DNA of 64,000 nt, taken from the IMG/VR virus record IMGVR_UViG_3300020578_000006, positions 165,718-229,717 of that record; one strand, 5' to 3'. The position numbers and the translations under genes were made by a program. The notes beneath the pieces are model-generated. The model was not told the origin of the DNA, did no database searches, and saw nothing but the letters and a program-made list of their open reading frames with translations. Positions 447-51,116 of the stretch are shown piece after piece (within the stretch, counting starts at the first letter, position 1; the number at the start of each line of letters is the position of its first letter).

Positions 447-841
447 TACATGGTCTCCATCTTTAATAACTCTATTAGATTCTTTATATCAAAACCAATA
501 CTATGAATAGTCTTCTCAACACGTTCTAGAAATTCAACAACACTCTCTCTTTCCTTAATCTCTAAGTTAAGATCTGCAACAGCTGAGTGTCGTTCCGCAG
601 CCTCTTTAAGAGAGGGGTATGTCATTTTTACAGGAGACTCTGCCTTTACCGCTTCGATTACGGAAGACACTAAAATGTTTTTTTTCTTAGTTAGCTCTAT
701 AAGCTCACTTTTCTCTAACATCAAGCGAGACACCCATTTTGCTTTTTTACCGGGTAGTGTTAATGCTGCCTCTTTGAGGTTAAGCTCATCTAGCTTTACA
801 TCTTCTTCTAGCTCTGCTACATATTTTTGCAGTAAAGTCAT
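446..841 (-). CDS. uvsY: UvsY-like recombination mediator
   Basis: Size, helical EEDVKLDELNL..KKAKW pattern and position directly upstream of uvsW, as in T4-like phages. Confidence 0.7.
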   Translation of the reverse strand: MTLLQKYVAELEEDVKLDELNLKEAALTLPGKKAKWVSRLMLEKSELIELTKKKNILVSSVIEAVKAESPVKMTYPSLKEAAERHSAVADLNLEIKERESVVEFLERVEKTIHSIGFDIKNLIELLKMETM

Positions 842-878
842 AAATATGATTGTAATACCTTATAGTGAAAAATCAATC

Positions 879-1094
879 ATGATAACATTTAAACAATTTG
901 TAATGAATGAAGAAAATGTAGCCGGGGACGGAGGTGTTTTTGGATCAGCTGCTAGTATGGGACATGGAGGTGATGTCGGCAATACTGATTTTTACGCACC
1001 CGGTGCAGCATTTTTGGCCAAACCTCTTTTTAAAGTAAAAGGCAAAAAAAATAAAATACTTGTACAAAGAAGAAATAAGTTTAAATACTTCTGA
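879..1094 (+). CDS. Small protein with capsid-targeting-like N-terminus (MITFKQFVMNE)
   Basis: Internal ATG of the 675..1094 ORF; the upstream part of that ORF is antisense to uvsY. Confidence 0.6.
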   Translation: MITFKQFVMNEENVAGDGGVFGSAASMGHGGDVGNTDFYAPGAAFLAKPLFKVKGKKNKILVQRRNKFKYF

Positions 1095-1510
1095 TGGACC
1101 TAGGTCATTGGATTTTAAAAGAGGGTATATCTTTTAATGAATCGTCATTTGGATTCATTTATGAGATATGCAATACAGTTACAGGTAGAAAATATGTAGG
1201 TAAAAAGCAATGTCAGAGTAAACTAAAGCGTAAACCCTTAAAGGGCAAGAAAAATAAAAGAATAGAAATAAAAGAGTCTGATTGGAAAAGCTATACAGGG
1301 TCGTCAAAAGAGCTTAATGAAGATATTGAAAAGTACGGTAAAGACAAATTTACTTTTACTATATTACATGCATGTGGGTCTAAATGGGAATTAGGATATA
1401 GAGAAATAAAAGAGCAGATAGAAAGAGATGTAATCTTAAGAGATGATTATTATAATGGCATTCTAAATGTCAGGATAGGGACGCCGCCTAAGAATTTTAG
1501 TATTGACTAG
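1094..1510 (+). CDS. GIY-YIG endonuclease (endonuclease II/DenA-like)
   Basis: GFIY..N..TGRKYVGKK, ESDWKSYTGSS and YYN motifs. Confidence 0.8.
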   Translation: MDLGHWILKEGISFNESSFGFIYEICNTVTGRKYVGKKQCQSKLKRKPLKGKKNKRIEIKESDWKSYTGSSKELNEDIEKYGKDKFTFTILHACGSKWELGYREIKEQIERDVILRDDYYNGILNVRIGTPPKNFSID

Positions 1511-1536
1511 TACTAAAATTCTTTTATAATTTAAAG
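1503..1536 (+). promoter_or_regulatory. Sigma70-type promoter, leaderless arrangement
   Basis: TTGACT-16 nt-TATAAT-6 nt-ATG(1537). Confidence 0.7.
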
Positions 1537-2070
1537 ATGAGAGGAGTTTATTTTGAAGATAAAAACCTTGGCATACGATTTGCAAGTTGTCAAGTTATTT
1601 TTGATAGGGAAATAGAGCCACAATTGACAGAGGATGTTATTAAGTATGGGCTTGAAAAGAATAATCGTTTAAAAAGACAGTTTATAGTATACAGGGTGGC
1701 CTCGTTTTTTACAGATTCTCTTGGTAATAGTATCAATGTTAAGACTGTTTTCTTGCTTCCAACAAAAATAATCTCTCAACATTTTAGCGGAGAAGATATT
1801 TTTATATACAACAGTTTTAGAAATATTTTTAATATTTTATCAATTAATTTTCTTAATACAGATTTATCTCAAGCAGACTTTCAGAACATACTTGGCAAGA
1901 ATACGGGAGAAAGTAAAGAACTTAAAGCAAGAATAACTAATAATTTATATAAGCGCGGTACACCTAACCTTACAAAACTCTATTCTTATCTTAAGAAATA
2001 CAAAATACATAAGCTACAAGAGGATATATCTCAAAACATTAAGATCAAATTAGGGTTGTTTGTAGCATAA
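1537..2070 (+). CDS. Hypothetical protein
   Basis: 177-aa ORF with its own promoter. Confidence 0.6.
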   Translation: MRGVYFEDKNLGIRFASCQVIFDREIEPQLTEDVIKYGLEKNNRLKRQFIVYRVASFFTDSLGNSINVKTVFLLPTKIISQHFSGEDIFIYNSFRNIFNILSINFLNTDLSQADFQNILGKNTGESKELKARITNNLYKRGTPNLTKLYSYLKKYKIHKLQEDISQNIKIKLGLFVA

Positions 2071-2080
2071 ATATAATATA

Positions 2081-2437
2081 ATGAAGTTTTTAGCTAAGCT
2101 AGCAGAAGAATATAATAAACTAGAAGTTGAAAAGCCTCAATGGGTGGAAGAATATGTTACACCCACAACACCATCTTCAACAGTTGCAACCACACCCTCT
2201 ACATCAATAACAGGTACTAAGCCAGGTAGTAATCTAGGTAAAGCCATACAAGACACTCTTGATGTTCAAATTGACCCGGAATTGGCTAAGAAAAAAGAAG
2301 AATTAGATAATGTTTATAAGCAAGTAGCGGATGCCCTTAAGAAAAAGGCAATGGACGCAACAAATAAGCTTAAACAAACATCGAGTGAATTAGCCGCTAC
2401 CCCAACGACAGCAGTGCCGTCGGTTCCAGCGGTATGA
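2081..2437 (+). CDS. Hypothetical late protein (probable internal head protein)
   Basis: TAAATA upstream; N-terminus MKFLAKLAEE; Thr/Pro-rich. Confidence 0.55.
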   Translation: MKFLAKLAEEYNKLEVEKPQWVEEYVTPTTPSSTVATTPSTSITGTKPGSNLGKAIQDTLDVQIDPELAKKKEELDNVYKQVADALKKKAMDATNKLKQTSSELAATPTTAVPSVPAV

Positions 2438-2778
2438 AATTTAATAAATTACTAGAAACAAAATATAGAGAGCTTTTCGAGCAAGTACCTCCTCAAGATT
2501 TAAACATACCTGCTCCGGAAGCTCCTGTAGCTGCACCGGCGCCGGCTGCTGCTGTTCCTCCAGCTGAACCGCCTCAGCAGAAGCCATTAACACCTGAAGG
2601 CGAAGTATTTTTAATTAATCTTATCCGTAAAGCCTTGTTTATGAACCCTGATGATCTAGGATTAAAGACAATTAAGGAGTTACCAGAAGTAAATGCAAAA
2701 AACGCGTCTGAGATTTTAGATAAGATTGTCAAGTTAATGCAAGTAGAAGCTATTGATTTGGATGTAAATACGAAATAA
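2434..2778 (+). CDS. Hypothetical late protein (probable internal head protein)
   Basis: ATGA-overlap with previous gene; MKFNKLLE..LFEQ; Pro/Ala linker. Confidence 0.55.
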   Translation: MKFNKLLETKYRELFEQVPPQDLNIPAPEAPVAAPAPAAAVPPAEPPQQKPLTPEGEVFLINLIRKALFMNPDDLGLKTIKELPEVNAKNASEILDKIVKLMQVEAIDLDVNTK

Positions 2779-2845
2779 TTAAAAAGTATTCTAATACTAT
2801 TGACGTTATTACTAATAAGGAAGTTGGTGGTCAATAAATAATATT

Positions 2846-3730
2846 ATGAATAGGGACATTAAGTTATTGTTTGAGGCTTATAATAGTATTAAAGAGGCAG
2901 AAGATACTAACATAGACACCTTTCATAAAGAATTGGCCAAACAATGGGCTAGTTTATTCTTAGATAAATTACATGAGTATCCTATTACCAGTAGATCGGC
3001 ACACTTAGAAAGATTGCTTGATGGTTCATTAGAAGTTTTTAAGAAGTATATTCTAGATGATATTAAATCTAAAAAACTATCTTATTTAAAGGCAGACGCT
3101 TTTTCAAAAAGCGAAGATGCTCAAAGCATTGTAAAAAAATTCACAGTAGTAAGTGGAGGTGTAGATAACACCAGTGATGTAGGTTTTGATTTGAGTGAAG
3201 TGGACCACGAGCAAGCCCAGAGCTTGCAAGATGTAGTAGACAGAACAATTGAAGACATGGAGAATGATGAAGATTTTGCAGATACTTTTCCTCAAGAATA
3301 CAGAGAATTTAAGAACAATATGTTTATTATGTCCACCGATAGTGGTGATTTTGTGGCTGTACTTCCAGGGCATTTAGACGAGAAGCAAGTATTTGCAAAA
3401 TTGGCATCAGCTTTCAGTGAAGATAAAAAAGGCCTATCAGATCAAGAATATCACCAAGCCCGTAAATTTGGGCTTGAAAGCGCAGGAGAAGTGGTCGGTA
3501 AAGGCCCTATAAAGATTCAGCTGACTAAAGACCAGACTTTATTATGCACAAGAGATGGACGGGAGCAAGAAGTAAAGTTCGTTAAAGGTGTTATATTTAA
3601 TTGTGATGAATGGGTAGGGGATTATTATCATTGTGAATCAAAGAAATATGGTGGTGTTGCCGTATTTCCTCCAGACATTAAGCTATTAAGCGCCCCAGAG
3701 GGCACAATTACTCATCTAACTCCAGAGTAA
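2846..3730 (+). CDS. Hypothetical late protein; contains a domain paralogous to 56580..56810
   Basis: AATAAATA-5 nt-ATG; MNRDIKLLFEAY; visible alignment to the early ORF. Confidence 0.6.
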   Translation: MNRDIKLLFEAYNSIKEAEDTNIDTFHKELAKQWASLFLDKLHEYPITSRSAHLERLLDGSLEVFKKYILDDIKSKKLSYLKADAFSKSEDAQSIVKKFTVVSGGVDNTSDVGFDLSEVDHEQAQSLQDVVDRTIEDMENDEDFADTFPQEYREFKNNMFIMSTDSGDFVAVLPGHLDEKQVFAKLASAFSEDKKGLSDQEYHQARKFGLESAGEVVGKGPIKIQLTKDQTLLCTRDGREQEVKFVKGVIFNCDEWVGDYYHCESKKYGGVAVFPPDIKLLSAPEGTITHLTPE

Positions 3731-3778
3731 ATGTAAAGGTTTACCTGTTTACTTAGTTTATTAACATATAAATAACAA

Positions 3779-4948
3779 GTGGCTTACATATCCCTAAAAG
3801 ACCTATATTTTGAAGACGTAGCCGGCATAACTGTGCCTCCGCTGCCTAGACAACAGGTAAATACACCCCCGGTCAAAGTTTTTGTGCCGGGTGATGAATA
3901 TGTACCTCAAACACCGTGGACAGAATACGATATATCTCCAGATTTATTTCAAAAAACAGCAGGTGGGGATAAGGAAGGTACTGGTAGAGGAGAATACAGT
4001 ATAGCATGTATATTGTATGGGTTCAAGACTAAGGAACAAGTGGATAAAGCATCTGGTAGAATTATACAAGGCGGGGGAGCTTCTTTTGACGTGGTAGGAC
4101 CAGATAAACGCAAGTATGAGGTAAAAGAATTAACTAAAGCTGTACGTACAGGAACGGAAGGAACCGGGGTTTTTACAGATATCCTTAATTCGACAATAGA
4201 ATTGTTAGATGCTATACTAAAGGAATTTAATACGCTAGACGCCCAGGGTAAGCAGACCATAAACAATATGATTCTAAATAGCAATACAGTAAAAAGCACT
4301 ATTCTTAACAGAAAAAGTCAAAAGGGACATTTTGACGCTATTAAAGACAGGTGGAGCTTAGATGAATATTTAAATGACATAAAGCGTAAAGCCCCAAGAG
4401 AGCTCTCTAAAGGTATTCTTATTTCTCCTATTTTAAATTTAGGTCAATATAAAGAAGAGCGCCCTTACGTAATTTTTTCCTTAAAACAATTAGTTGATGT
4501 ATTAAACGAGATTGCCTCTACACAAGTCGCAACAGGCAATGAAGAAGGTACACCTAATCCAGCTGTAAGGGATATCGCCGATACTATCAATAAACATTAC
4601 AGCGTACAAGGTGATGAGAAAGAAAAAGAATTTTTCAAAAAAGAGGCAGAGAAAATTGATAGGGCATTAATTCAAAAGAGATGTAAGGAATTTAAAAAAT
4701 GTACTGATGAATTATCTTTTAGAAAGCAAATAATAGCACTTAATTTGTCAGGAATGCTTAAGCTAATTCAAGATAAAACTCAAGATATTGTTGAGAATTT
4801 ATTTCCAAATGATGGGTTATTTGCAGTAAACAGCCAAGGCTTTCAATACATTCCGCATAGTAAGTTAAATACCTATCTTGCTTTTGATACAATAAGTTCA
4901 GGAAGTGTAAAGATCAAGCAAAAAATAGCTAGTAATGAAACCATTTAA
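3779..4948 (+). CDS. Hypothetical late protein, possible PD-(D/E)xK nuclease-like fold
   Basis: TATAAATA-4 nt-GTG; GRGE...FDV...YEVK pattern. Confidence 0.4.
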   Translation: MAYISLKDLYFEDVAGITVPPLPRQQVNTPPVKVFVPGDEYVPQTPWTEYDISPDLFQKTAGGDKEGTGRGEYSIACILYGFKTKEQVDKASGRIIQGGGASFDVVGPDKRKYEVKELTKAVRTGTEGTGVFTDILNSTIELLDAILKEFNTLDAQGKQTINNMILNSNTVKSTILNRKSQKGHFDAIKDRWSLDEYLNDIKRKAPRELSKGILISPILNLGQYKEERPYVIFSLKQLVDVLNEIASTQVATGNEEGTPNPAVRDIADTINKHYSVQGDEKEKEFFKKEAEKIDRALIQKRCKEFKKCTDELSFRKQIIALNLSGMLKLIQDKTQDIVENLFPNDGLFAVNSQGFQYIPHSKLNTYLAFDTISSGSVKIKQKIASNETI

Positions 4949-5561
4949 ACAATTTCTTACAGAACAAAATGGTAGTAGTATAGGTTTTTTTCCTGGAGCA
5001 TTTAAACCGCCTCACAAAGGCCATTTTGATACTGCAAAACAAGCTGCAACAATTAATGATGCAGCAGTAATTTTAGTTTCAAAAATAGATAGAGATAACA
5101 TATCAGCCGACGACTCAATGTTTGTCTGGGAGACTTATAAACAGTATCTACCAAAAAACTTGTATGTGTTTTCAGTTCAAGGGTCCCCTGTTTTAACTAT
5201 ATATCAAATTACAGACATCCTTAACAATGGTGTTTTTACCCCCACACCTAGAGCCCCTACCCCTCTACCTGCGGCAACAGAAATAGCAGATTTGTTAAGA
5301 AAGTTTAACCCACCTTACAGTGTTAACCTTTATGCAAGTCAAGAAGATACAGAAAGATTTAAATCATTCTATGGACCAAGTAAAGAGATTTTCCAAGGAA
5401 AAAACGTACAAAGTATTGCTATGAAAGATATTTCTCGACTAGCGTCTGCGACAGATGCACGTGCAGCATTGTTAAAAAATAATGCAAAGGGGTTTCATTC
5501 TTTATTACCAAATATTGCAGATCAAAGTAAAGAGGCTATCTTTAATCGATTAAAAAAATGA
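4935..5561 (+). CDS. HxGH nucleotidyltransferase (cytidyltransferase-like) with capsid-targeting-like N-terminus
   Basis: FFPGAFKPPHKGHF; C-terminal SATDAR; starts MKPFKQFLTE. Confidence 0.8.
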   Translation: MKPFKQFLTEQNGSSIGFFPGAFKPPHKGHFDTAKQAATINDAAVILVSKIDRDNISADDSMFVWETYKQYLPKNLYVFSVQGSPVLTIYQITDILNNGVFTPTPRAPTPLPAATEIADLLRKFNPPYSVNLYASQEDTERFKSFYGPSKEIFQGKNVQSIAMKDISRLASATDARAALLKNNAKGFHSLLPNIADQSKEAIFNRLKK

Positions 5562-6919
5562 AATCTTTTAAACAATTCTTGCTCAAAGAGCAAATTATAA
5601 AAGAAGAGCGTACTTCTTATTTTTCACCACATCTCTCACATTTAGAAGACTTAGCTGTAGAGAACGGTAAAGCAGGATTTAAAGATTTTCTGACACATGT
5701 AAATTTAATTTCTAAAAAGATTCAAGGCTACGAATCAGAGCAAGAAATTAATGCAAAAATAGATGGAAGCCCTGCTATTTTGTTTGGTATTGATCCAAAA
5801 ACTAAGACTTTTTTTATATCATTAAAATATGTAGTGGATGAATCTACCGATACAATAAAAGAAAATGCAAAACTCTTTCATACATCAGAAGAGATAGATC
5901 AAGCTATGTCGGATAGACCAGATTTTGCATCTAGGCTTAAAAATTTATTAGAGCAGTTAACACCAGCTTATGATAATTCTGGGTTAATATATCAAGGTGA
6001 TGTTTTATACGCTAGTCAAGAAGATAAAAAAAGAGTGAAAATAGGTACAGAAGAGTTTATTACTTTTGAACCAAACACTATAATGTATGCTATTCCTATG
6101 GATGATAAATCAGAACTATTTCATAAAGTATTAAACTCTTCAGTGGGGGTAGTTGTTCATGATAGTTTTAAAGGGGTAGTAGATAAAGAATCGGGGATAA
6201 TAAAACTTGTACCGGCGTCTAAAAACATTGACAGTTTGATTGCTAGTAGTACAAATTCAAAAGCATTCATAAAAGGTAGCAATTATCGTACTTTTGCTTT
6301 TGATATACCCGATAAATTTTTTGATAATCTTAATACACTTATAGTGGACGCTAGTAAGCATATAAACTCTATTTCTGATGAATTTAATAATGAATATGTG
6401 TCGCCTGGTAGGGGGGCGCCTTCTAGCCAAATCCTAGATATGTTAAAGCGCTATTTAAATAAGCAACTTGACCTAGAGGACTCAGGACTGTTTGGGGCAG
6501 CAAAGACTAGCGGTAGATTAAACTTTAATGCATTTTACAAGGGGTTTCAACAATATGTTGAGTCGCAGATAACAAAAGGTATAGAAGGACTTGGACCTAA
6601 GGGTCAAGCCCAACGCCAGCAAAGACTTAGTATTGTTCAAAGCTTTTTACAGAACAACGCAGCTAATTTTGAGCATCTATTAACAGCTACCTTTGAGATG
6701 GTAAAAATTAAGTACCTTATTTTTAATATACTGTCTCAACTAGATACTAAGCTAACACAGCATGCTTTTTACAGACTTCCCGATGGCTCGTATGTTAAAA
6801 CAAAAGATGAAGGCTATGTTTTGTTTGCTGGTAATAATCAAGTAAAGATTGTAGATAGAGTAGATTTTTCTAAGATGAACCGCTTAGTTGGCGGTAGGCG
6901 CAGAACCCTTATTACCTGA
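5558..6919 (+). CDS. Conserved T4-like phage protein with ligase-type nucleotidyltransferase motifs
   Basis: KIDG, YQGD, DEGYV and VKIV motifs; starts MKSFKQFLLKE. Confidence 0.55.
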   Translation: MKSFKQFLLKEQIIKEERTSYFSPHLSHLEDLAVENGKAGFKDFLTHVNLISKKIQGYESEQEINAKIDGSPAILFGIDPKTKTFFISLKYVVDESTDTIKENAKLFHTSEEIDQAMSDRPDFASRLKNLLEQLTPAYDNSGLIYQGDVLYASQEDKKRVKIGTEEFITFEPNTIMYAIPMDDKSELFHKVLNSSVGVVVHDSFKGVVDKESGIIKLVPASKNIDSLIASSTNSKAFIKGSNYRTFAFDIPDKFFDNLNTLIVDASKHINSISDEFNNEYVSPGRGAPSSQILDMLKRYLNKQLDLEDSGLFGAAKTSGRLNFNAFYKGFQQYVESQITKGIEGLGPKGQAQRQQRLSIVQSFLQNNAANFEHLLTATFEMVKIKYLIFNILSQLDTKLTQHAFYRLPDGSYVKTKDEGYVLFAGNNQVKIVDRVDFSKMNRLVGGRRRTLIT

Positions 6920-7498
6920 TTCGTTAATAGCATTTAATGCTTCAAGATTAAAAATTGTTTGGCGTAATACAGATTCTAGAACTTCTTTACCCTCACCGTA
7001 CAGCATATCTCTTATTTTAGATACTATTTTTAATTCATGTGAATTTTCATCTGCATCAAACTCACCGTCTTTTCTAAATTTGTTATATTCAAGATAGTTT
7101 TTAACACTCTCAATATAGCTTGCAGCTAATGTAATTTTACTGAATACCCAAGGTTCTAAATCTTGATTGTCTTTTAGTAGATTGTAAAGAGCTTTTGACC
7201 CGTTATGAATTTTATATAGTTCGTTCTTTGCCATATCAGCTTCAGATTCACCAGAACCGGTAGAGGGTTCAACAGGGGTAATTTTTGAAGAATCTTCACA
7301 ATTTTCACTATTTTTACACTGTAAACAATCTTCACCATCTTCACACCCACAAGATTTTTTATTAAGCTTTATTACTGTTGATGTGTTATTGGAAGGTACC
7401 ATATTCGTGGTTTCGGCCGCGGGGCCCAGGTTTAATTCATTAACTACAATCTGGGTATAAGCTTCGGAAATTTTTTCTAATTCACCTTTTCTGCTCAT
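6884..7498 (-). CDS. Hypothetical late protein
   Basis: AATAAATA-6 nt-ATG; DMAKNELY..LEPWVFSKITLAASY segment resembles a repeat domain common in T4-like phages. Confidence 0.6.
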   Translation of the reverse strand: MSRKGELEKISEAYTQIVVNELNLGPAAETTNMVPSNNTSTVIKLNKKSCGCEDGEDCLQCKNSENCEDSSKITPVEPSTGSGESEADMAKNELYKIHNGSKALYNLLKDNQDLEPWVFSKITLAASYIESVKNYLEYNKFRKDGEFDADENSHELKIVSKIRDMLYGEGKEVLESVLRQTIFNLEALNAINESGNKGSAPTAN

Positions 7499-7530
7499 TT
7501 TATATATTTATTCAAATAAATACATAATAT

Positions 7531-7947
7531 ATGCGTAGTTACAAAGAATTTTTCTATGAACAAATACTAGGGGCTACGGAAGGTATTACTATTCAACATG
7601 TTGGAAACGTTAGAGCCACTGTAGACACTGGTAACAGCGGTTATAATGTACTTCATGCAGAAATAATTGATGGTGCAAAAGAGGGACATGTAAAATTTAA
7701 AACAGTAAACGACAAAGTGTTAGAATTGCCTGTAAAAGAGTTTATAACGGTATCCGGAAATAATAATACCAACGATAGACCAGTAGTAGAGTTAGACTGT
7801 AGCTTGGGCCAAGAACAATTTAATAAAGTTCCTTTCAGCCTTGCGGACAGAAGTCAGCAAGATACCCCTGTTCTCTTAAGTAAAGATTTTATAAAATTAA
7901 ATGGCGGTGTTGTTAATGTTAATATTAACAGCGAAATTAAAAAATAA
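7531..7947 (+). CDS. Retropepsin-like aspartic protease (RimK-associated family) with capsid-targeting-like N-terminus
   Basis: ATVDTGNSG, R.VVEL, FSLADRS and PVLL motifs; starts MRSYKEFFYE. Confidence 0.75.
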   Translation: MRSYKEFFYEQILGATEGITIQHVGNVRATVDTGNSGYNVLHAEIIDGAKEGHVKFKTVNDKVLELPVKEFITVSGNNNTNDRPVVELDCSLGQEQFNKVPFSLADRSQQDTPVLLSKDFIKLNGGVVNVNINSEIKK

Positions 7948-8274: not shown

Positions 8275-8931
8275 TTAGATTAATTTTCGGTTTTGTGCGA
8301 ACTCAATAAACTTGTAAAATTCGTTTCTAGAATTATCTTTATCATCTAGAAAAGCACCAGACATTCTTGCGGTACGCATAGTTGAATCATGTCTAATGCC
8401 ACGGTTAGAGCAGCATGTGTGAGCGGCCTCAATCATAACAGCTACTCCTTTATTCTTAATACAAACTTCATCAATATACTTGTGAATTTGCATTGTAAGG
8501 TTTTCTTGTACTTGAGGGCGACGAGAAAACCAATCCACAATACGATTTAATTTACTCAATCCAATCACCTTACCGTCCTTTGCAGGAATATAAGCAACGT
8601 GGGCAAACCCCATAAAAGGTGCGTGGTGGTGTGAGCAGAGCGATGTAACTTTAATATTGGTTTGAGATACAATACCATCATACTTATCTACATTATCAAA
8701 CGCGGTAATCTTAGGCGGCTCACTATAACATCCCCAGGCAAAGTCTTCTACAAATGCCTTAGCAACCCTAAAGGGGGTGTTGGCACTATTTGGATCGTTT
8801 CTCCAATCATAACCCAAAGCGTCCATGTATGCTTCATACGCGGCCGCGGCCTTTAGTATAATTTGATTTCTCTCTTCCTCGGAATGTGGATGGTTATGAT
8901 TGGCAAAAGCTAGCTTTTTCTTATTAAACAT
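8275..8931 (-). CDS. folE: GTP cyclohydrolase I
   Basis: CSHH, IGLSKLNRIV, RRPQVQENLT, HTCCSNRG. Confidence 0.95.
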   Translation of the reverse strand: MFNKKKLAFANHNHPHSEEERNQIILKAAAAYEAYMDALGYDWRNDPNSANTPFRVAKAFVEDFAWGCYSEPPKITAFDNVDKYDGIVSQTNIKVTSLCSHHHAPFMGFAHVAYIPAKDGKVIGLSKLNRIVDWFSRRPQVQENLTMQIHKYIDEVCIKNKGVAVMIEAAHTCCSNRGIRHDSTMRTARMSGAFLDDKDNSRNEFYKFIEFAQNRKLI

Positions 8932-41927: not shown

Positions 41928-42581
41928 TTACTTTCTCTTTTTAAGAAGTAGTAGTGCGCTAACACCTAACAATGATAGGATTGAAGGTTCGGGTACAGCA
42001 GTAAATTGTGTTAAGTAATTTACTCCCCCGTTGCTTGCATAGTTTTCAAAACTACCACTGCTTCCACCGTTAGACCATGTAAAGTCAGCCTTTGCATACA
42101 TTTCTATTGTGTATGTTTTAGGTGCTTGAATGGTACCAGCGGTTACGTTCTGTAATAAGTTAACAGAAGAATTGGCTGCCCAATATTTGTTAACGTTACC
42201 ATCAGTCCATGAGTTACTAAACGGAACGTTATATGAACTGAATGCACCTTTATCAGCTGCACCAGTTTCATACACCCTCCAGTATAAAGTAACTGCATTA
42301 GCAGAATCTGTAGAACTTTGCCAGGTTTTAGCAGTTGCACTAGCTAATTGTAGTAACCCACCTTGATTCATGTTAATAGTACCAAGGCTAGCAGGTAAAG
42401 AATTAGCAGGGTTTGGACCATGGGTATCACCAAGCAAATTATAGAACGTAGTTGCTTGATTAATCACATCCAAACTAGAAGCATCTACACTAAACCCAAC
42501 ACCTACTGCATACATAGTATTGGCATAAGATGCTGATGCTAACCCTAAACTTATTACAATAGCTAGAATTAATTTATTCAT
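41928..42581 (-). CDS. PEP-CTERM sorting-domain protein
   Basis: Signal peptide plus VPEPS-ILSLLGVSALLLL-KKRK. Confidence 0.9.
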   Translation of the reverse strand: MNKLILAIVISLGLASASYANTMYAVGVGFSVDASSLDVINQATTFYNLLGDTHGPNPANSLPASLGTINMNQGGLLQLASATAKTWQSSTDSANAVTLYWRVYETGAADKGAFSSYNVPFSNSWTDGNVNKYWAANSSVNLLQNVTAGTIQAPKTYTIEMYAKADFTWSNGGSSGSFENYASNGGVNYLTQFTAVPEPSILSLLGVSALLLLKKRK

Positions 42582-44146
42582 ACATTACCCTCCTTTCTTT
42601 TGAGCGTTCTTATTGCAAGTACCCCTAGTCCTCCAAGCAGCATTAAGCTACCAGCAGAGGGTTCAGGAATACCTGAAACTTCAATGTTATTAACAAACAG
42701 ACCATAGTTTGGTTGATCTGCTGTAGTGGTCTGTATGTCACCTGCATAGAAGTGAATAGTAGTAATATAATCCGGCACATTTACATTAGTCACAAATAAC
42801 ACCTCTGGATTTCCGTATAAATAAGCACTTACTTCAACAAGTGTAGGGGTTAATTGCTCTACCATGTAAGTTAATGCTTGTTGATAGCCATTGGCTAACA
42901 CCTGAGTATTAGTTAATCCAGTACCTGCAAAGGTAATAGGATCTGACCATACATTCTGGAATCTAAACACTGCAGTGTTTCCAGACATGAATTCAACACC
43001 TCGGTTACCTCCATTCCAAAGATAGTTTGCATCTACTGATAGAGTTTGACCTGCTATAAGGCCACCACCATTGAGTACAAACCAACCGTTTGAGTATTGA
43101 TTATAAGCCGTATTACCAGGTACAAAATTAAATGCACTTGCTCCAATACTAGTTCTTCCTCCTTGAGAGGAATTACTAATCTGGGTTATAGCAGATGTGT
43201 CATTTTGGAAGTACCAAGTACCTACACTTGTACCAGCACCTTCTATCCATGTTGCAGTGGTATAGCTGCTGGCATCCTCTATACCTAATACAGCTGCATG
43301 TGTTGTATTTAGACTAAAGATAGCGAGCAATGCAGCAAGCAAGCTAACTTTAGTTTTGTTTTTTGTTCTCATAAAACCTAATAATGTTGCGCCTATTACA
43401 AGCAATAACCAAGTATCTGGTTCAGGAATAATACCTACATCAGAGAGCGAATCACCCACAGATAGATAATCAATATGCACAACAGGTGCTGCAGTTGCAG
43501 AACCTTGTCTTAAGTTAATAGCAGATATAAAAGAAGCTGGCTCTGAACCTGTAGTAGATAGCCAATTAACTGTTCCTAGTTCTGCTACAAGTAATGATCT
43601 GTTTGTATCATTAGGGTTTATGTACAAGCTAAATGTATCATTAAGAGTGCCAGCTACAAAATCCCATGCCATAACTATAGTGTATTCAGTGTTAAAATCT
43701 AATAATGTAGTTCCCCAGGTCATTGCAGATCCTGTGCCTGATGCAGATTGTAATCCCAGTTGAAATCCAGCACCTGAGCTTCTAGCAGCCAATCTTTGAT
43801 AAAAATTGGAAGAAGTACCTGCAGGGTCAGATAGGTTTAAGAAGTAATCACCATTAACAAAGGCAGATGCAATTTTAAGATCTACTCTTGTATATAAAGT
43901 ATTACCAGACGTCTTTACTACTTGTGAAGTTAGTGCTTTCCAAACATCTTGACCTGTTGTATTAATAATTGCTTTACCATCTTGGTACTGAATAGGATTA
44001 TTAGAAGCAGTGGATGTTTGAGTCCATCCATTCTGCCCTACTAGATTTCCATTTACATATCCTGTTGAAAAGTCATCAATTAGATATGTTGCTGCATTGA
44101 GATTTATAGCTACCAATGCAAGTAGTGTTGTTATTAGTTTTTTCAT
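42578..44146 (-). CDS. Tandem double PEP-CTERM protein
   Basis: Signal; internal IPEPDTWLLLVIGATLLGFMRTK; second signal; terminal IPEPSAGSLMLLGGLGVLAIRTLKRK. Confidence 0.85.
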   Translation of the reverse strand: MKKLITTLLALVAINLNAATYLIDDFSTGYVNGNLVGQNGWTQTSTASNNPIQYQDGKAIINTTGQDVWKALTSQVVKTSGNTLYTRVDLKIASAFVNGDYFLNLSDPAGTSSNFYQRLAARSSGAGFQLGLQSASGTGSAMTWGTTLLDFNTEYTIVMAWDFVAGTLNDTFSLYINPNDTNRSLLVAELGTVNWLSTTGSEPASFISAINLRQGSATAAPVVHIDYLSVGDSLSDVGIIPEPDTWLLLVIGATLLGFMRTKNKTKVSLLAALLAIFSLNTTHAAVLGIEDASSYTTATWIEGAGTSVGTWYFQNDTSAITQISNSSQGGRTSIGASAFNFVPGNTAYNQYSNGWFVLNGGGLIAGQTLSVDANYLWNGGNRGVEFMSGNTAVFRFQNVWSDPITFAGTGLTNTQVLANGYQQALTYMVEQLTPTLVEVSAYLYGNPEVLFVTNVNVPDYITTIHFYAGDIQTTTADQPNYGLFVNNIEVSGIPEPSAGSLMLLGGLGVLAIRTLKRKEGNV

Positions 44147-44793
44147 AATCTTTTTCTTAATGCTAGTAATCCTAGTAATGTTAAATGTAAGGTTGAAGGT
44201 TCAGGAACTACTTCAATTATTTCATTACCTCCGTTATAAGAAAATGTACCTACCAATGCTGTAGTATTAGAAGAGAAGACAAACGATTCCATATTAGGTG
44301 TGCTATCAAACAGAGGGGCGCGCCATAAAGTATCAGTTAAAATAGCTTTATCGTAAGAACTGTTATAAGGTGCAGCTGTAAAATTAACTAGGTCTGCATC
44401 ATATATAGCTAATGCAAGTTGTGTATTTACCGCAACATCAGTATTATCTATTTTGCTATAATTGATTTGCATCTCAAGAAAATCTACTCCCGTATCAACA
44501 AAACCTGTACCGTTAGGAAGAGGGGAGAAAATACCATTACTATAAGTACCCCATAACGCTGACATGTAACGGGTATTAACTGTATTATTATCTACAAGAA
44601 CAGAAAATAAATCGTCATACAAAACTATAGAAGAAACAGCTTTGGATTCGGACACCATAAACCAACCAATAAAAAAGCCGCACATTGTGCGGCTTAGCAT
44701 CTTTAAAGCGTTATAAGCGCTCTTGTATCCTAGCATGTGAGGTTCTCCCTCATATAATGTACTTATACCTGCTGTTGTATTGTTTGCAAGCAT
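44143..44793 (-). CDS. PEP-CTERM sorting-domain protein
   Basis: VVPEPSTLHLTLLGLLALRKRL; true start may be a later Met. Confidence 0.85.
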   Translation of the reverse strand: MLANNTTAGISTLYEGEPHMLGYKSAYNALKMLSRTMCGFFIGWFMVSESKAVSSIVLYDDLFSVLVDNNTVNTRYMSALWGTYSNGIFSPLPNGTGFVDTGVDFLEMQINYSKIDNTDVAVNTQLALAIYDADLVNFTAAPYNSSYDKAILTDTLWRAPLFDSTPNMESFVFSSNTTALVGTFSYNGGNEIIEVVPEPSTLHLTLLGLLALRKRL

Positions 44794-48031: not shown

Positions 48032-48772
48032 ATGCAACTTGTTATTGTTTTTTTTATAAATCTATGTAATTATAATATGTTCAAACCCCAAGTAACATTT
48101 ACTACGCAGTGTTACCAGAAAGATTATTTAAATGTTCTAGCCAAAGACAGACTATTGCACATTAACAACATTTTAAACTCTAGAATGGATATTATTATTA
48201 ATAAGTGTGAAGAATACGAAATTATAAAATTATTTTGCTCTAATCTTCAAAAAGAAAATTTAATAAATAATTACTTCTGTGTTAATGAAGAAGAAAAAAA
48301 TATTTTAAGCACTTTTAATTTAACACAAAAAAACTTTTCAAATAATCTACATTATAATATTTGTTTGTACGGGATGGCAGCGCTTTATTTTTGTAAGACA
48401 GATTATATTTGCTTCTTTACTGGGGATAGTACACCGTTGTATGTGGGAAATTTTGTAAAAGATAGTATAGAGCATGACAAAAATTCCAGTATTCCTCATA
48501 CATACATGTTAAGATGGTGCAATACAGATGGGGTAAAGCGTGAGTCATTTAAAGAAGATGAAAAGTTTTTTTACACAAAGCTATTCTCTGATCAAAATTT
48601 TTTAATTAACACAAAGCATTTTAACTATAAAGAACTTTTACAAAATTATAAACAACCATCACTATTTCCTCACATAGATGCATTTGAAGCAAGATTTTTT
48701 GATTACATGAGATTACACAATATTGATAGATGTGTTTATAAAAACGGGAAATACTTACACAGAAACTATTAA
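48032..48772 (+). CDS. Hypothetical, possibly degenerate GT-A protein
   Basis: CKTDYICFFTGD; probable start MFKPQ. Confidence 0.4.
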   Translation: MQLVIVFFINLCNYNMFKPQVTFTTQCYQKDYLNVLAKDRLLHINNILNSRMDIIINKCEEYEIIKLFCSNLQKENLINNYFCVNEEEKNILSTFNLTQKNFSNNLHYNICLYGMAALYFCKTDYICFFTGDSTPLYVGNFVKDSIEHDKNSSIPHTYMLRWCNTDGVKRESFKEDEKFFYTKLFSDQNFLINTKHFNYKELLQNYKQPSLFPHIDAFEARFFDYMRLHNIDRCVYKNGKYLHRNY

Positions 48773-48954
48773 CAGTGATAGTTTAAATAGCGTTGTGCGG
48801 CTTTTGCAGTATGACTACCCTTATTCTTTTGTCTGGATTTGATTCCTCTGGCCTTAGAACATGTAAGCTTGCCTTTGGTTTGACGCTTTAATATACCAGG
48901 TCTAACGGGATCGTGTATACTCTTTTCCAAGATAAACTCTTTAAATGATTTCAC
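48769..48954 (-). CDS. Small basic protein with capsid-targeting-like N-terminus
   Basis: TATAAATA-5-GTG; MKSFKEFILE. Confidence 0.65.
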   Translation of the reverse strand: MKSFKEFILEKSIHDPVRPGILKRQTKGKLTCSKARGIKSRQKNKGSHTAKAAQRYLNYHC

Positions 48955-49384: not shown

Positions 49385-49765
49385 GTGAACAACGATTCTC
49401 GTCTATTATCAGAGGCCTATAAGACAATAGTTGAGCAAAACCCTCAATTGGGTCAGTTTAGACAGGATGTACCGACTTATAATATACAACAAATGTCACA
49501 GGCTTTTGGTTTAAATCCGGATCAAGAAAAAGCTGTTAAAAATTTGTTACAAGCTTTTAATATTAATCCTGACAACCCTCAGGCTAGTCAGCGTGCTATT
49601 ATTGGAATGATAATAAATGGTTTAGCTAGACTCGCACAAACCGCTGTAAATCAGCCTGTGCAGCAAGCCCAGCCACAACAGACTTCTGCACAAATAGCCC
49701 CGGTGGGTGGTCAACCACAAAGCGCCCCAGTTAGCGCAGGGTTTAGGACCATCACCCCGGAATAA
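49385..49765 (+). CDS. Late protein, MNxDxxL family, Gln-rich
   Basis: TAAATA-5-GTG; MNNDSRLLSEAY. Confidence 0.6.
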   Translation: MNNDSRLLSEAYKTIVEQNPQLGQFRQDVPTYNIQQMSQAFGLNPDQEKAVKNLLQAFNINPDNPQASQRAIIGMIINGLARLAQTAVNQPVQQAQPQQTSAQIAPVGGQPQSAPVSAGFRTITPE

Positions 49766-49965: not shown

Positions 49966-50724
49966 GTGAATGCGGATAGTCATTTGATATTTGAAGCCTT
50001 TAAGAACAGGGTTGTTAAGAAGAATGATGATGAAGAGGGTGATCTAATGACCCATATGAAAGAAAAGGGTATGATACCAAAGGATGCACGTGTAACTCTA
50101 CCAGCACACAAGACTGAGGAAGAAGAAAAAGATTCATTTGATATGCACGTTGATCAATTAAAGAATACTTCCACAGAAGAATTAATTGAAGATTTGAAGG
50201 ATTTGTACCGCATTGTTGCTGATGAAAAAAATGTGGGTGATTATTCTTATGATAGTGCAAATTTGGATATTGAAATAATTCATGATATCTTGAAAAGCAG
50301 AGGAATGGATTATCAAAAAGACTTGGCTCCTATTTGGAATAAGATTGATAGTGAAGTGAATGGAAGTGAAGAAAATGCAGAACAAAGACTTGACCCCAAG
50401 TGTTGGAAAGGCTATCATAAACAAGGCACCAAAATGAAAGGTGGTGTAAGAGTAAACAATTGTGTTAAGAGTGAGAATGCAGAAGACATGTCCAAAAGTC
50501 CTTTTCATTATGATCCCAGTCATGGTTTAATGCAGGCGGCCAATCAAATCAATGATATATTGAAGAGCTCCTATAATGATGAAGCTACGCCTGAACACAT
50601 TGAAAAAATGGCATTAAGAATAGTGGGGCCTCAGTCTGAATATGGAGATTATCATGAATTTAATTTAGCATTGCGCGGGGTAAAGGCGTTGTTGTATAGG
50701 TATGTTGCAGTACAGATGAATTAA
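49966..50724 (+). CDS. Late protein, MNxDxxL family
   Basis: TATAAATA-5-GTG; MNADSHLIFEAF; CWKGY...GG..VNNCVK motif. Confidence 0.65.
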   Translation: MNADSHLIFEAFKNRVVKKNDDEEGDLMTHMKEKGMIPKDARVTLPAHKTEEEEKDSFDMHVDQLKNTSTEELIEDLKDLYRIVADEKNVGDYSYDSANLDIEIIHDILKSRGMDYQKDLAPIWNKIDSEVNGSEENAEQRLDPKCWKGYHKQGTKMKGGVRVNNCVKSENAEDMSKSPFHYDPSHGLMQAANQINDILKSSYNDEATPEHIEKMALRIVGPQSEYGDYHEFNLALRGVKALLYRYVAVQMN

Positions 50725-50732
50725 ATAACAGT

Positions 50733-51116
50733 ATGAATAGAGACAGTCATCTTATTATGGAGGCCTATTTAACTGTAAGAGAACAAGCAACCACACCTCC
50801 AACTACAACAGTTCAAACACCGGCTGCGGCCCCTCAAAGCACAAATTTACAGGCCGAAACATTGTTGCAAAAGATTACCGAATTAGCTAGAATTCCTTAT
50901 AAAAATAGCATGAAGCTTGTTCAGATATTAAATGGTATGAGAAATCAGCCGGCTCAACCGGGGGCTTCCACCACACCAGTTCGAGTAACTAATAATGTAG
51001 AATTGGATAAAGCAATTGACGATATAATGAAAGTGCTCGGTATTAATTATGGCAATAAAGAGGCTGTGTATAGTGCCATAAGGTCGTTGGTTGATACCTA
51101 CGTTACTACCCCTTAA
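50733..51116 (+). CDS. Late protein, MNxDxxL family
   Basis: TAAATA-5-ATG; MNRDSHLIMEAY. Confidence 0.6.
   Translation: MNRDSHLIMEAYLTVREQATTPPTTTVQTPAAAPQSTNLQAETLLQKITELARIPYKNSMKLVQILNGMRNQPAQPGASTTPVRVTNNVELDKAIDDIMKVLGINYGNKEAVYSAIRSLVDTYVTTP

What the first reader, a model, noticed from the sequence alone, without database searches (positions are those of the whole stretch)
879..7947. Family of genes with T4 capsid-targeting-sequence (CTS)-like N-termini, including enzymes
Seen: five unrelated ORFs start MITFKQFVMNE (879), MKPFKQFLTE (4935), MKSFKQFLLKE (5558), MRSYKEFFYE (7531) and MKSFKEFILE (48954, minus strand). They lie behind TAAATA late motifs or in such operons. Known: T4 internal protein IPIII uses MKTYQEFIAE as a CTS, cleaved after Glu by prohead protease gp21, and internal proteins are injected with the DNA. 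Inference: this phage packages and injects these proteins, and three of them look like enzymes (nucleotidyltransferase, ligase-like protein, aspartic protease).
Basis: partly seen in the sequence, partly recalled or inferred. Interest (0 to 1): 0.68.

Follow-up and report, generated by a model that had tools for sequence, protein, structure and literature searches.

The report
Capsid-targeting tags on phage enzymes
An uncultured T4-like phage puts the same short N-terminal tag that phage T4 uses to load proteins into its head onto several unrelated proteins, enzymes included, so it probably ships them into the host with its DNA; this also explains why such enzymes keep turning up in purified cyanophage particles.

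Summary
All five ORFs exist as described. They share only their first 10-11 residues, M-[KR]-[ST]-[FY]-K-[EQ]-F-h-x-E. A sixth carrier (an M15 cell-wall peptidase) lies outside the window. Nine further genes carry a second tag, MNxD[ST]xLIFEAY, also with Glu at position 10.

The tag matches T4 sequences that I fetched: IPI and gp61.1 start MKTFKEF, and IPII/IPIII start MKTYQEFIAE. The 229.7 kb genome is T4-like and encodes a gp21-type (S77) prohead protease, gp22 and gp23.

The tag lies outside the catalytic folds. It is conserved in orthologues at 43-60% identity, and it is present or absent in a modular way across the DUF6267 family. Tagged genes are enriched behind ATAAATA late-promoter-like motifs.

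Published virion proteomes of three T4-like cyanophages detect the homologous nucleotidyltransferase. In all three, the protein carries this tag.

The enzyme calls hold: an NMNAT/PPAT-fold nucleotidyltransferase, an RNA-ligase-like DUF6267 protein and a retropepsin-like protease.

Cleavage after Glu and injection are inferred, not shown. Verdict: new members of the known T4 capsid-targeting system. Interest is moderate.

The parts
841..847 (+). ATAAATA late-promoter-like motif 32 nt upstream of ORF 879
879..1094 (+). 71-aa small protein with a basic C-terminus and a type-A tag, MITFKQFVMNE|ENVAGDGGVFG. It is a relative of T4 gp61.1.
   Evidence: Sixteen homologues keep a tag ending in Glu followed by [DE][NM]xAGxGGVFG. 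phrog_1823 matches residues 1-28.
2846..3730 (+). 294-aa acidic protein with a type-B tag, MNRDIKLLFE|AY. ATAAATA lies 13 nt upstream.
3779..4948 (+). 389-aa protein of unknown function, the first gene of the late operon 3779-4935-5558 (GTG start, TATAAATA 12 nt upstream). Its N-terminal Glu is not conserved in orthologues, so it is not counted as tagged.
4935..5561 (+). 208-aa HxGH nucleotidyltransferase (NMNAT/PPAT fold) with a type-A tag, MKPFKQFLTE|Q
   Evidence: AF2 model pLDDT 92.5, with residues 1-10 at 54. Foldseek finds NMNAT/PPAT at probability 1.0.
5558..6919 (+). 453-aa DUF6267 protein with a covalent nucleotidyltransferase (RNA-ligase-like) fold, a KxDG motif and a type-A tag, MKSFKQFLLKE|Q
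   Evidence: Pfam 1.6e-48. K67 in at least 90% of sequences, D69 and G70 invariant, and E418-G419 invariant. AF2 pLDDT 92.8 with residues 1-20 low. Top structural matches are RNA ligases, Z 8.6-6.4.
6884..7498 (-). 204-aa protein with a type-B-like start, MSRKGELEKISE|AY. ATAAATA lies 14 nt upstream. Orthologues keep [LI]xEAY.
7531..7947 (+). 138-aa retropepsin-like protease (PF05618, invariant D32-T33-G34) with a type-A tag, MRSYKEFFYE|Q. ATAAATA lies 16 nt upstream.
48769..48954 (-). 61-aa very basic protein (net charge +13 after the Glu) with a type-A tag, MKSFKEFILE|K. GTG start, with TATAAATA 13 nt upstream.
49385..49765 (+). 126-aa protein with a type-B tag, MNNDSRLLSE|AY
49966..50724 (+). 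252-aa protein with a type-B tag, MNADSHLIFE|AF. ATAAATA lies upstream.
50733..51116 (+). 127-aa protein with a type-B tag, MNRDSHLIME|AY

Best explanation
The 10-11-residue N-termini are capsid-targeting sequences of the T4 type.

Proposed sequence of events:
1. The tagged genes are transcribed late.
2. The short amphipathic tag (aromatic at positions 4 and 7, hydrophobic at P3, Glu at P1) docks the new protein onto the gp22-based scaffolding core while the prohead assembles.
3. The gp21-type S77 protease cuts after the Glu at position 9-11. This frees the mature protein inside the shell.
4. DNA is then packaged around it, and the protein leaves with the DNA at the next infection.

Predicted cargo in this phage:
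- an NMNAT/PPAT-fold nucleotidyltransferase and an RNA-ligase-like DUF6267 enzyme, which are fused into one protein in some metagenomic relatives and so probably act together;
- a retropepsin-like protease;
- an M15 cell-wall peptidase;
- two small basic proteins.

Nine or ten proteins with the second tag (LIFE|AY, which resembles the N-termini of T4 gp22, gp67 and gp21) are probably loaded the same way.

Shown: the tags, their conservation and modularity, the protease and scaffold genes, the late-type motifs, and virion detection of tagged homologues in other phages. Inferred: binding to the core, cleavage, injection, and what the enzymes do in the host.
For: 1. Identity to validated T4 tags. 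T4 IPI and gp61.1 start MKTFKEF, and IPII/IPIII start MKTYQEFIAE. One homologue of the window's nucleotidyltransferase starts MKTFKEFLTE. The functionally mapped positions 4, 7, 8 and 10 (PMC9026906) are the conserved ones here.

2. The machinery is present: Peptidase_S77 at 5.5e-36 and Gp23 at 7.8e-91, with gp22 between them. All six tag-bearing phages tested for the family encode S77.

3. The tag is an appendage. Pfam domains start at residues 14-25. AF2 gives pLDDT 50-54 for the tag against more than 90 for the folds.

4. Modularity. Of 150 DUF6267 representatives, 118 could be classified; 18 have only 4-10 residues before the first conserved motif and no tag, and 42 match a tag pattern. 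Many of the remaining 58 begin MxxFKx[FY], like T4 IPI. S-PM2 and S-SZBM1 DUF6267 lack the tag, while phage C48C1 has it.

5. Conservation. About 65 nucleotidyltransferase homologues and 44 protease homologues keep the tag; the 20 protease homologues I aligned show E10 invariant. Syntenic relatives at 54-59% identity keep it on all orthologues. Codons differ (Ser as TCT/AGT/TCA/TCG, Glu as GAA/GAG), so selection acts on the peptide.

6. Late-type motif enrichment, p=1.6e-4.

7. Virion proteomics. The tagged cytidylyltransferase/NMNAT is found in S-SZBM1, S-CREM2 and S-SCSM1 virions. Their tags were read. The untagged DUF6267 of S-SZBM1 is absent from that phage's virion list. S-SCSM1_89, a virion protein, starts with the type-B-like MDSKTFNSLSEAY.
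Against: - There are no proteomic or N-terminal data for this phage or a close relative.
- The authors of the cyanophage papers caution that the enzymes might be abundant contaminants of CsCl preparations.
- The Glu sits at position 9, 10 or 11. P3 is sometimes F, M or V rather than the L/I of the T4 logo.
- S-PM2 has gp21 but no tagged gene, so the system is not universal in the group.
- DUF6267 lies behind a late-type motif in S-PM2 even without a tag, so late expression alone does not single out cargo.
- The GTG start of 48954 lies only 5 nt after TATAAATA, which would give an almost leaderless mRNA.
- The type-B tag has no experimentally validated counterpart.
Confidence: 0.75

Rival explanations
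1. The tag is a conserved N-terminal helix with another job. It might recruit the proteins to a different phage complex (replisome, nucleotide-synthesis complex, membrane), or serve as a degradation or regulation signal. Under this view, virion detection of the nucleotidyltransferase is carry-over.
For: The tagged cluster sits among replication and recombination genes such as UvsW, UvsY and primase. The authors of the proteome papers raise contamination as a possibility. T4 gp61.1 lies beside the primase gene.
Against: The tag equals the experimentally defined T4 packaging signal down to the functional positions. Three independent virion proteomes find the tagged enzyme. The carriers are as disparate as a cell-wall peptidase, a protease and small basic peptides, so no shared cytoplasmic complex suggests itself. 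The association with late-type motifs also fits virion proteins.
Confidence: 0.12
2. The similarity reflects the mRNA, not the peptide. An A/T-rich 5' coding stretch would favour translation initiation, or a short recombination cassette would be shared by gene starts.
For: The genome has 35% G+C. Three tags share TTTAAACAATT. Lys at position 2 is common in bacterial proteins in general (my own knowledge).
Against: The amino-acid pattern is kept through synonymous and two-step codon changes, and in phages of 43% G+C, where MRFRQFIIE is encoded as ATG CGT TTC CGT CAA TTC ATC ATC GAA. F4 and E10 are invariant or nearly so across homologues down to 42% identity. None of 907 internal Met residues and none of 36 early-like genes carries the pattern.
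Confidence: 0.04
3. The tags are real prohead-core signals, but the proteins are structural or scaffold accessories that are degraded or stay in the capsid. In that case they are not effectors delivered into the host.
For: In T4 the core proteins gp22, gp67 and gp68 and gp21 itself carry N-terminal LIxE-type sites and are largely degraded. The type-B tag resembles these more than it resembles the IP tags. Many type-B proteins are acidic with low-complexity stretches.
Against: The type-A carriers are folded enzymes with intact catalytic motifs: HxGH, KxDG, DTG, and SxHxxGxAxD in the M15 domain. Such proteins have no obvious use inside a sealed capsid. T4 proteins with the same tag (IPI, and Alt with a related one) act in the host.
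Confidence: 0.09

Closest known systems
T4 internal proteins IPI, IPII and IPIII with the capsid targeting sequence (Mullaney and Black 1996; reviewed in PMC9026906 and PMC3012670)
   Same: Same N-terminal heptad/decamer (MKTFKEF, MKTYQEFIAE), with Glu at the cut site. Same type of phage, with a gp21 S77 protease and a gp22 core. In both, diverse unrelated cargo shares only the tag. Some cargo is small and basic.
   Different: The phage is only distantly related: no DNA match in 50,697 phage records. Cargo includes folded enzymes of 138-453 aa. There are 6 type-A and 9-10 type-B carriers rather than 3-4. No experimental data exist here.
T4 Alt (ADP-ribosyltransferase packaged in the head)
   Same: An enzyme loaded into the head through a short N-terminal propeptide ending in Glu at position 10 (MELITELFDE), then injected.
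   Different: Different tag sequence and different enzyme class. C-terminal processing of Alt has no counterpart tested here.
T4 gp61.1 (54-aa hypothetical protein) and its cyanophage counterparts S-SCSM1_97 and S-CREM2 gp160
   Same: ORF 879 shares with gp61.1 the tag plus the post-Glu xVAGDxGG stretch. The cyanophage counterparts lie upstream of the primase gene and are listed as virion proteins.
   Different: gp61.1 is not annotated as an internal protein in the T4 record. ORF 879 lies next to uvsY, not next to the primase gene.
Virion-associated cytidylyltransferase/NMNAT-like proteins of T4-like cyanophages (S-SZBM1_140, S-CREM2 gp154, S-SCSM1_91)
   Same: Same HxGH enzyme superfamily, same neighbourhood with DUF6267, and the same N-terminal tag.
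   Different: They are longer (286-409 aa), with a linker between tag and fold. They are too divergent for tblastn from the window's protein. The papers did not link virion presence to a targeting tag.
Propeptide-bearing ejection/inner-body proteins of giant phages (SPN3US, phiKZ; PMC5694885, PMC7411985)
   Same: Many head-internal proteins are processed by the prohead protease and delivered to the host.
   Different: This rests on the abstracts only. Those phages use their own cleavage motif and much larger propeptides. This comparison was not tested here.

Membership tests
T4-type CTS-bearing head-internal proteins | N-terminal ~10-residue tag with aromatic/hydrophobic residues at positions 4 and 7 | tested here: met
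   F or Y at position 4 and F at position 7 in all six type-A carriers. F4 is nearly invariant in homologues. The T4 reference sequences were read directly.
T4-type CTS-bearing head-internal proteins | gp21-type cleavage site, hydrophobic-x-Glu, at the end of the tag | tested here: met
   Glu at position 10 or 11 with L, I, F, V or M at P3 in all carriers. E10 is invariant in the protease family. P3 is not always L or I.
T4-type CTS-bearing head-internal proteins | Same genome encodes the S77 prohead protease, the gp22 scaffold and the gp23 capsid protein | tested here: met
T4-type CTS-bearing head-internal proteins | Cargo proteins unrelated to each other apart from the tag | tested here: met
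   All-against-all BLASTP found no pairs among the type-A carriers. Their Pfam families are distinct.
T4-type CTS-bearing head-internal proteins | Protein physically present in the virion | tested here: inconclusive
   No data for this phage. Tagged homologues of one carrier are in three published cyanophage virion proteomes.
T4-type CTS-bearing head-internal proteins | Tag removed by the prohead protease; mature protein injected with the DNA | not testable with these tools
   This needs N-terminomics and infection experiments.
HxGH (cytidylyltransferase-like) nucleotidyltransferases | Rossmann-like fold with (H/T)xGH after strand 1 | tested here: met
   PGAFKPPHKGH is invariant. Foldseek matches NMNAT and PPAT at E~1e-6 and probability 1.0. 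The Pfam score of 20.1 is just under the cut-off of 21. The substrate is not determined.
Covalent nucleotidyltransferases (RNA/DNA ligases, capping enzymes) | Motif I KxDG with the catalytic Lys, the later motifs, and the nucleotidyltransferase fold | tested here: met
   K67 is in at least 90% of sequences, D69 and G70 are invariant, and E418-G419-F-V and K430 are conserved. The top 23 VIA matches are RNA/DNA ligases apart from one poxvirus polymerase-complex chain; capping enzymes follow from rank 31. Best is Naegleria RNA ligase (Z 8.6, rmsd 4.0, 188 residues aligned), then T4 Rnl2 at Z 7.7. Z is middling, and there was no PDB match by sequence.
Retropepsin-like aspartic proteases (Pfam PF05618, RimB-like) | Pfam match above cut-off and the D-T/S-G catalytic triplet | tested here: met
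   33.1 bits against a cut-off of 27. D32-T33-G34 are invariant in 20 homologues. The profile matches 9g58 and 2pma. Activity was not tested.

The most novel reading that the evidence does not exclude
Short N-terminal tags form a readable grammar for head-loaded proteins across aquatic T4-like myoviruses. At least two classes exist here. A third, MKKSQLRQIIKE-like start appears on several genes of Flavobacterium phage immuto, which also has an S77 protease. If so, the injected proteome of uncultured phages could be predicted from sequence alone.

In this lineage the core cargo would be a pre-packaged pair: a nucleotidyltransferase and an RNA-ligase-like enzyme. Delivered with the DNA, it would act before any phage gene is expressed. 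It might repair nucleic acids cut by host defence nucleases, or restore a nucleotide cofactor.
Probability: 0.3. Interest if true: 0.75.

Novelty: new member of a known kind. Interest (0 to 1): 0.55.

Why it matters
1. It offers a concrete mechanism for a repeated, unexplained result. Cytidylyltransferase/NMNAT-like enzymes keep appearing in cyanophage virion proteomes, and the authors could not tell cargo from contaminant.

2. It suggests that the T4 capsid-targeting signal has been conserved across very distant T4-like phages. A simple motif scan could then list candidate injected proteins in metagenomic phage genomes.

3. It points to an uncharacterised, widespread enzyme pair (DUF6267 RNA-ligase-like plus an HxGH nucleotidyltransferase, sometimes fused). 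This pair is a likely first-minute effector of infection and worth biochemical study.

4. It flags T4 gp61.1 as a possible overlooked head-internal peptide.

Tried and rejected
- A DNA search of the region against 50,697 phage records found nothing.
- tblastn with the window's nucleotidyltransferase found only Flavobacterium phage immuto, where the domain sits inside a 907-aa protein.
- S-PM2 was fetched whole to use its 'virion structural protein' labels. It has no tagged gene, so the test was uninformative.
- I suspected a tag on ORF 3779 (MAYISLKDLYFE|DVAG). I dropped it because the Glu is not conserved in orthologues. Its body has no detectable relative among the genes upstream of DUF6267 in other phages.
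- A sequence search of DUF6267 against PDB chains gave nothing. Foldseek gave only weak RNA-ligase rows, best E=1.2e-3. The ligase call rests on VIA-align plus the motifs.
There is no result either way.
- Type-B proteins have no Pfam or annotated PHROG family.
- The open library holds no paper with 'DUF6267', and none linking the capsid targeting sequence to cyanophages.

Full report
**What the window is.** The window is bases 165,718-229,717 of a single 229,717-bp IMG/VR virus record with 35% G+C, judged complete by CheckV. The genome encodes a gp23-type major capsid protein (Pfam Gp23, 7.8e-91). It also encodes a gp21-type prohead protease (Peptidase_S77, 5.5e-36), with a gp22-like scaffold gene and a 47-aa ORF between them. 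The window opens with uvsW and uvsY. It is therefore a T4-like myovirus, but a distant one: the 7 kb region has no DNA match among 50,697 deposited phage genomes.

**The observation.** There are two small corrections. ORF 48954(-) starts with GTG. ORF 879 shares its frame with an upstream ATG at 675, but orthologues begin at the tag, and the ATG at 846 sits inside the promoter-like motif.

Outside their first 10-11 residues the five proteins are unrelated (all-against-all BLASTP). My own gene calling (312 genes) found a sixth carrier outside the window. It lies at genome 15636-16286, starts MVSYRQFIKE and has a C-terminal M15/VanY peptidase domain.

The statistics rule out chance:
- The full pattern occurs 7 times in the proteome, 6 of them at residue 1, against 0.03 expected.
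- None of 907 internal Met residues carries it.
- 2000 shuffles of residues 2-15 never gave more than one hit.

**A second tag.** Nine further genes start MNxD[ST]xLIFEAY. In the window these are 2846, 49385, 49966 and 50733. The other five are at genome 7470(-), 8086(-), 17031(-), 17430(-) and 153363(+). All nine occurrences of this core in the proteome are N-terminal, against 0.04 expected. Apart from one short shared C-terminal module between two of them, the proteins are again unrelated. Window ORF 6884-7498(-) has a longer variant (…KISE|AY) that its orthologues keep. This tag also places a hydrophobic residue at P3 and Glu at position 10.

**Comparison with T4, from fetched sequence.** T4 N-termini read as follows:
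- IPII and IPIII: MKTYQEFIAE
- IPI: MKTFKEFTSTTTPVSTITE
- Alt: MELITELFDE
- gp22: MLKEQLIAEAQ
- gp67: MEGLIEAIK
- gp21: MNEPQLLIETW
- ORF 61.1 (54 aa, 'hypothetical'): MKTFKEFIKE|DMVAGDSGG

The type-A tag is thus the same heptad as in T4 IPI and 61.1. According to the review PMC9026906, the first 10 residues of IPIII suffice for packaging. The review adds that residues 4 and 7 matter most for targeting and residues 8 and 10 for processing. Those are the positions conserved here. The type-B tag resembles the LIxE-type N-termini of the T4 core proteins. My type-A pattern, run on the whole T4 genome as a positive control, recovered IPII, IPIII and 61.1 among six in-frame starts; the other three are unrelated.

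**The tag is an appendage under selection.**
- Pfam domains begin at residue 14 (protease), 18 (nucleotidyltransferase) and 25 (DUF6267).
- AlphaFold models of the nucleotidyltransferase and DUF6267 are confident (pLDDT 92.5 and 92.8). Both give about 50-54 for the tag, which forms a short detached helix at residues 4-9.
- The 20 protease homologues aligned (of 44 found, down to 42% identity) keep MxSFKxFFxEQ, with E10 invariant.
- About 65 nucleotidyltransferase homologues keep MK[PST]FK[LQ]F[LV]E.
- Two syntenic metagenomic relatives at 54-59% identity keep tags on all orthologues, along with the upstream ATAAATA motifs.
- Codons differ between copies and between phages, including phages of 43% G+C, while the residues stay. 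Selection therefore acts on the peptide.

The tag is also modular. Of 150 DUF6267 representatives, 118 could be classified. Of these, 18 have only 4-10 residues before the first conserved motif and no tag, and 42 match a tag pattern. Many of the remaining 58 begin MxxFKx[FY] with a later LLE, like T4 IPI. S-PM2 and S-SZBM1 DUF6267 lack the tag; phage C48C1 has it. C48C1 has six type-A starts clustered at 57-68 kb, one of them on its cytidylyltransferase once the start is moved to an upstream GTG.

**Expression context.** ATAAATA, the core of the T4 late promoter, lies within 45 nt upstream of 54 of 312 genes. These include gp21 and many tail genes. It precedes 9 of the 15 tagged genes (Fisher p=1.6e-4). 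4935 and 5558 follow 3779, which has the motif, with overlapping stop and start codons. None of the 36 small minus-strand, early-like genes at the end of the genome is tagged.

**Independent evidence for packaging.** Three papers report the cytidylyltransferase/NMNAT-like protein in CsCl-purified virions of T4-like cyanophages:
- S-SZBM1_140 (PMC9146016)
- S-CREM2 ORF154 (PMC10665884)
- S-SCSM1 ORF91 (PMC9602691)

The papers call this recurrent and unexplained, and they mention contamination as an alternative. I read the N-termini from the deposited genomes: MRFRQFIIEA, MKNFSSFLTEA and MKSFLQFLKEA. All three are type-A tags, followed by a linker and then the HxGH fold.

In S-SZBM1 the neighbouring untagged DUF6267 is not in the virion list. 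In S-SCSM1 the virion protein ORF89 starts with the type-B-like MDSKTFNSLSEAY. The 61-aa virion protein ORF97, just upstream of the primase gene, belongs with the gp61.1-like peptides. All six tag-bearing phages that I tested for the family have an S77 protease: this one, T4, C48C1, S-SZBM1, S-CREM2 and immuto.

**What the cargo is.**
- *ORF 4935* is an HxGH nucleotidyltransferase. PGAFKPPHKGH is invariant. Foldseek matches NMNAT and PPAT structures at E~1e-6 and probability 1.0. Its substrate is open.
- *ORF 5558 (DUF6267)* has the covalent nucleotidyltransferase fold. K67 is in at least 90% of sequences, D69 and G70 are invariant, E418-G419 are invariant and K430 is in at least 90%. Its top 23 structural matches are RNA or DNA ligases apart from one poxvirus polymerase-complex chain, and capping enzymes follow from rank 31. 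Best is Naegleria RNA ligase (Z 8.6, rmsd 4.0, 188 residues), then T4 Rnl2 at Z 7.7 and REL1 at Z 7.6. The Z values are middling, so 'RNA-ligase-like' is a fold-level statement.
- *The pair.* Metagenomic proteins fuse the two enzymes (P0131 at 858 aa, and P0149). The two genes are neighbours in cyanophages. They probably work together.
- *ORF 7531* is a retropepsin-like PF05618 protein with an invariant DTG.
- *ORFs 879 and 48954* are small and basic after the Glu, with net charge +6 and +13, like T4 internal proteins.

**Mechanism, with the status of each step.**
1. Late transcription: motif evidence.
2. The tag binds the scaffolding core: inferred from T4.
3. The S77 protease cuts after Glu 9-11: inferred from the site and from the presence of the enzyme. 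The phage's own gp23 and gp21 show similar sites, …CINE|GNVAG and LLVE|T.
4. Mature proteins stay among the DNA and are ejected: inferred from T4.

I put 0.75 on the tags being functional head-loading signals.

**Rivals.**
- Another role for the helix, with virion carry-over: 0.12.
- Core accessories that never reach the host: 0.09.
- An mRNA-level feature or chance: 0.04.

**Novelty.** The capsid targeting sequence and its use by diverse T-even internal proteins are textbook (PMC3012670). I found no paper in the open library that extends it to cyanophage-like or other aquatic T4-like phages, that mentions DUF6267, or that links the virion-borne cytidylyltransferases to a tag. The library is incomplete, so this is not proof of absence. 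I rate the finding as new members of a known kind. The second tag class and the enzyme pair are the less expected parts.

**Limits.**
- The gene calls are my own crude ones.
- The tag counts use hand-made patterns derived from the data.
- The proteome evidence is from other phages and is correlative.
- The complex prediction could not be run.

Noticed in passing
L053:667-831 (-), T4 NC_000866 18966-19130; compare window 879-1094: T4 ORF 61.1 (54 aa, annotated hypothetical) starts MKTFKEFIKE|DMVAGDSGG. It has the same tag and the same post-Glu stretch as window ORF 879. It may be an overlooked head-internal peptide of T4 itself.
   Followed up: partly
genome 97692-99167 (-) = L031:1692-3167; window 879-1094: After its predicted cleavage Glu, the phage's own gp23 reads …CINE|GNVAGGVGSVFGG. 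This resembles the start of mature ORF 879 (E|ENVAGDGGVFGS). The small peptide looks like the new N-terminus of the capsid protein. I have no explanation for this.
   Followed up: no
window 1094-1510 (+): A SegE-type GIY-YIG homing endonuclease (Pfam 2.7e-30) sits between ORF 879 and the rest of the tagged cluster. It is at the same place in two relatives at 54-59% identity.
   Followed up: partly
window 42578-44146 (-) and 44143-44793 (-): Two phage proteins end in PEP-CTERM-like sorting signals: (I/V)PEPS, a hydrophobic stretch, then a basic tail. The first also has an internal copy and an N-terminal signal-peptide-like start. This is unusual for a phage and may hint at the host group.
   Followed up: no
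window 49966-50724 (+) and genome 8086-8949 (-): Two type-B proteins share an 80%-identical 36-residue Cys-containing module (RLDPKCWKGYHKQGTK.KGG.RVNNCVK). It matches several PHROGs of unknown function (phrog_4359 and others).
   Followed up: no
L054 (Flavobacterium phage immuto, NC_055915 100000-120000): This is the only cultured phage with tblastn matches to the window's nucleotidyltransferase and 61-aa protein. There both are domains of larger proteins. Several of its genes share a different N-terminal start (MKKSQLRQIIKE, MKKSQLREIIRKE, MKKSELVKLIKEE). It also encodes an S77 protease. This may be a third tag class.
   Followed up: partly
P0131, P0149, P0178 (metagenomic proteins): These are natural fusions of the HxGH nucleotidyltransferase with DUF6267, which argues that the two enzymes act in one pathway.
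   Followed up: partly
window 8275-8931 (-), and L055/L056 neighbours: GTP cyclohydrolase I, PTPS and radical-SAM genes follow the tagged cluster. This looks like a 7-deazaguanine-type base-modification module. It was not examined.
   Followed up: no
window 2081-2437 and 2434-2778 (+): Two adjacent small Pro/Ala/Thr-rich proteins start MKFLAKLAEEYNKLE and MKFNKLLETKYRELFEQ. They lie behind an ATAAATA motif, and their orthologues keep similar helical starts. They may be a looser tag or scaffold-like proteins.
   Followed up: no
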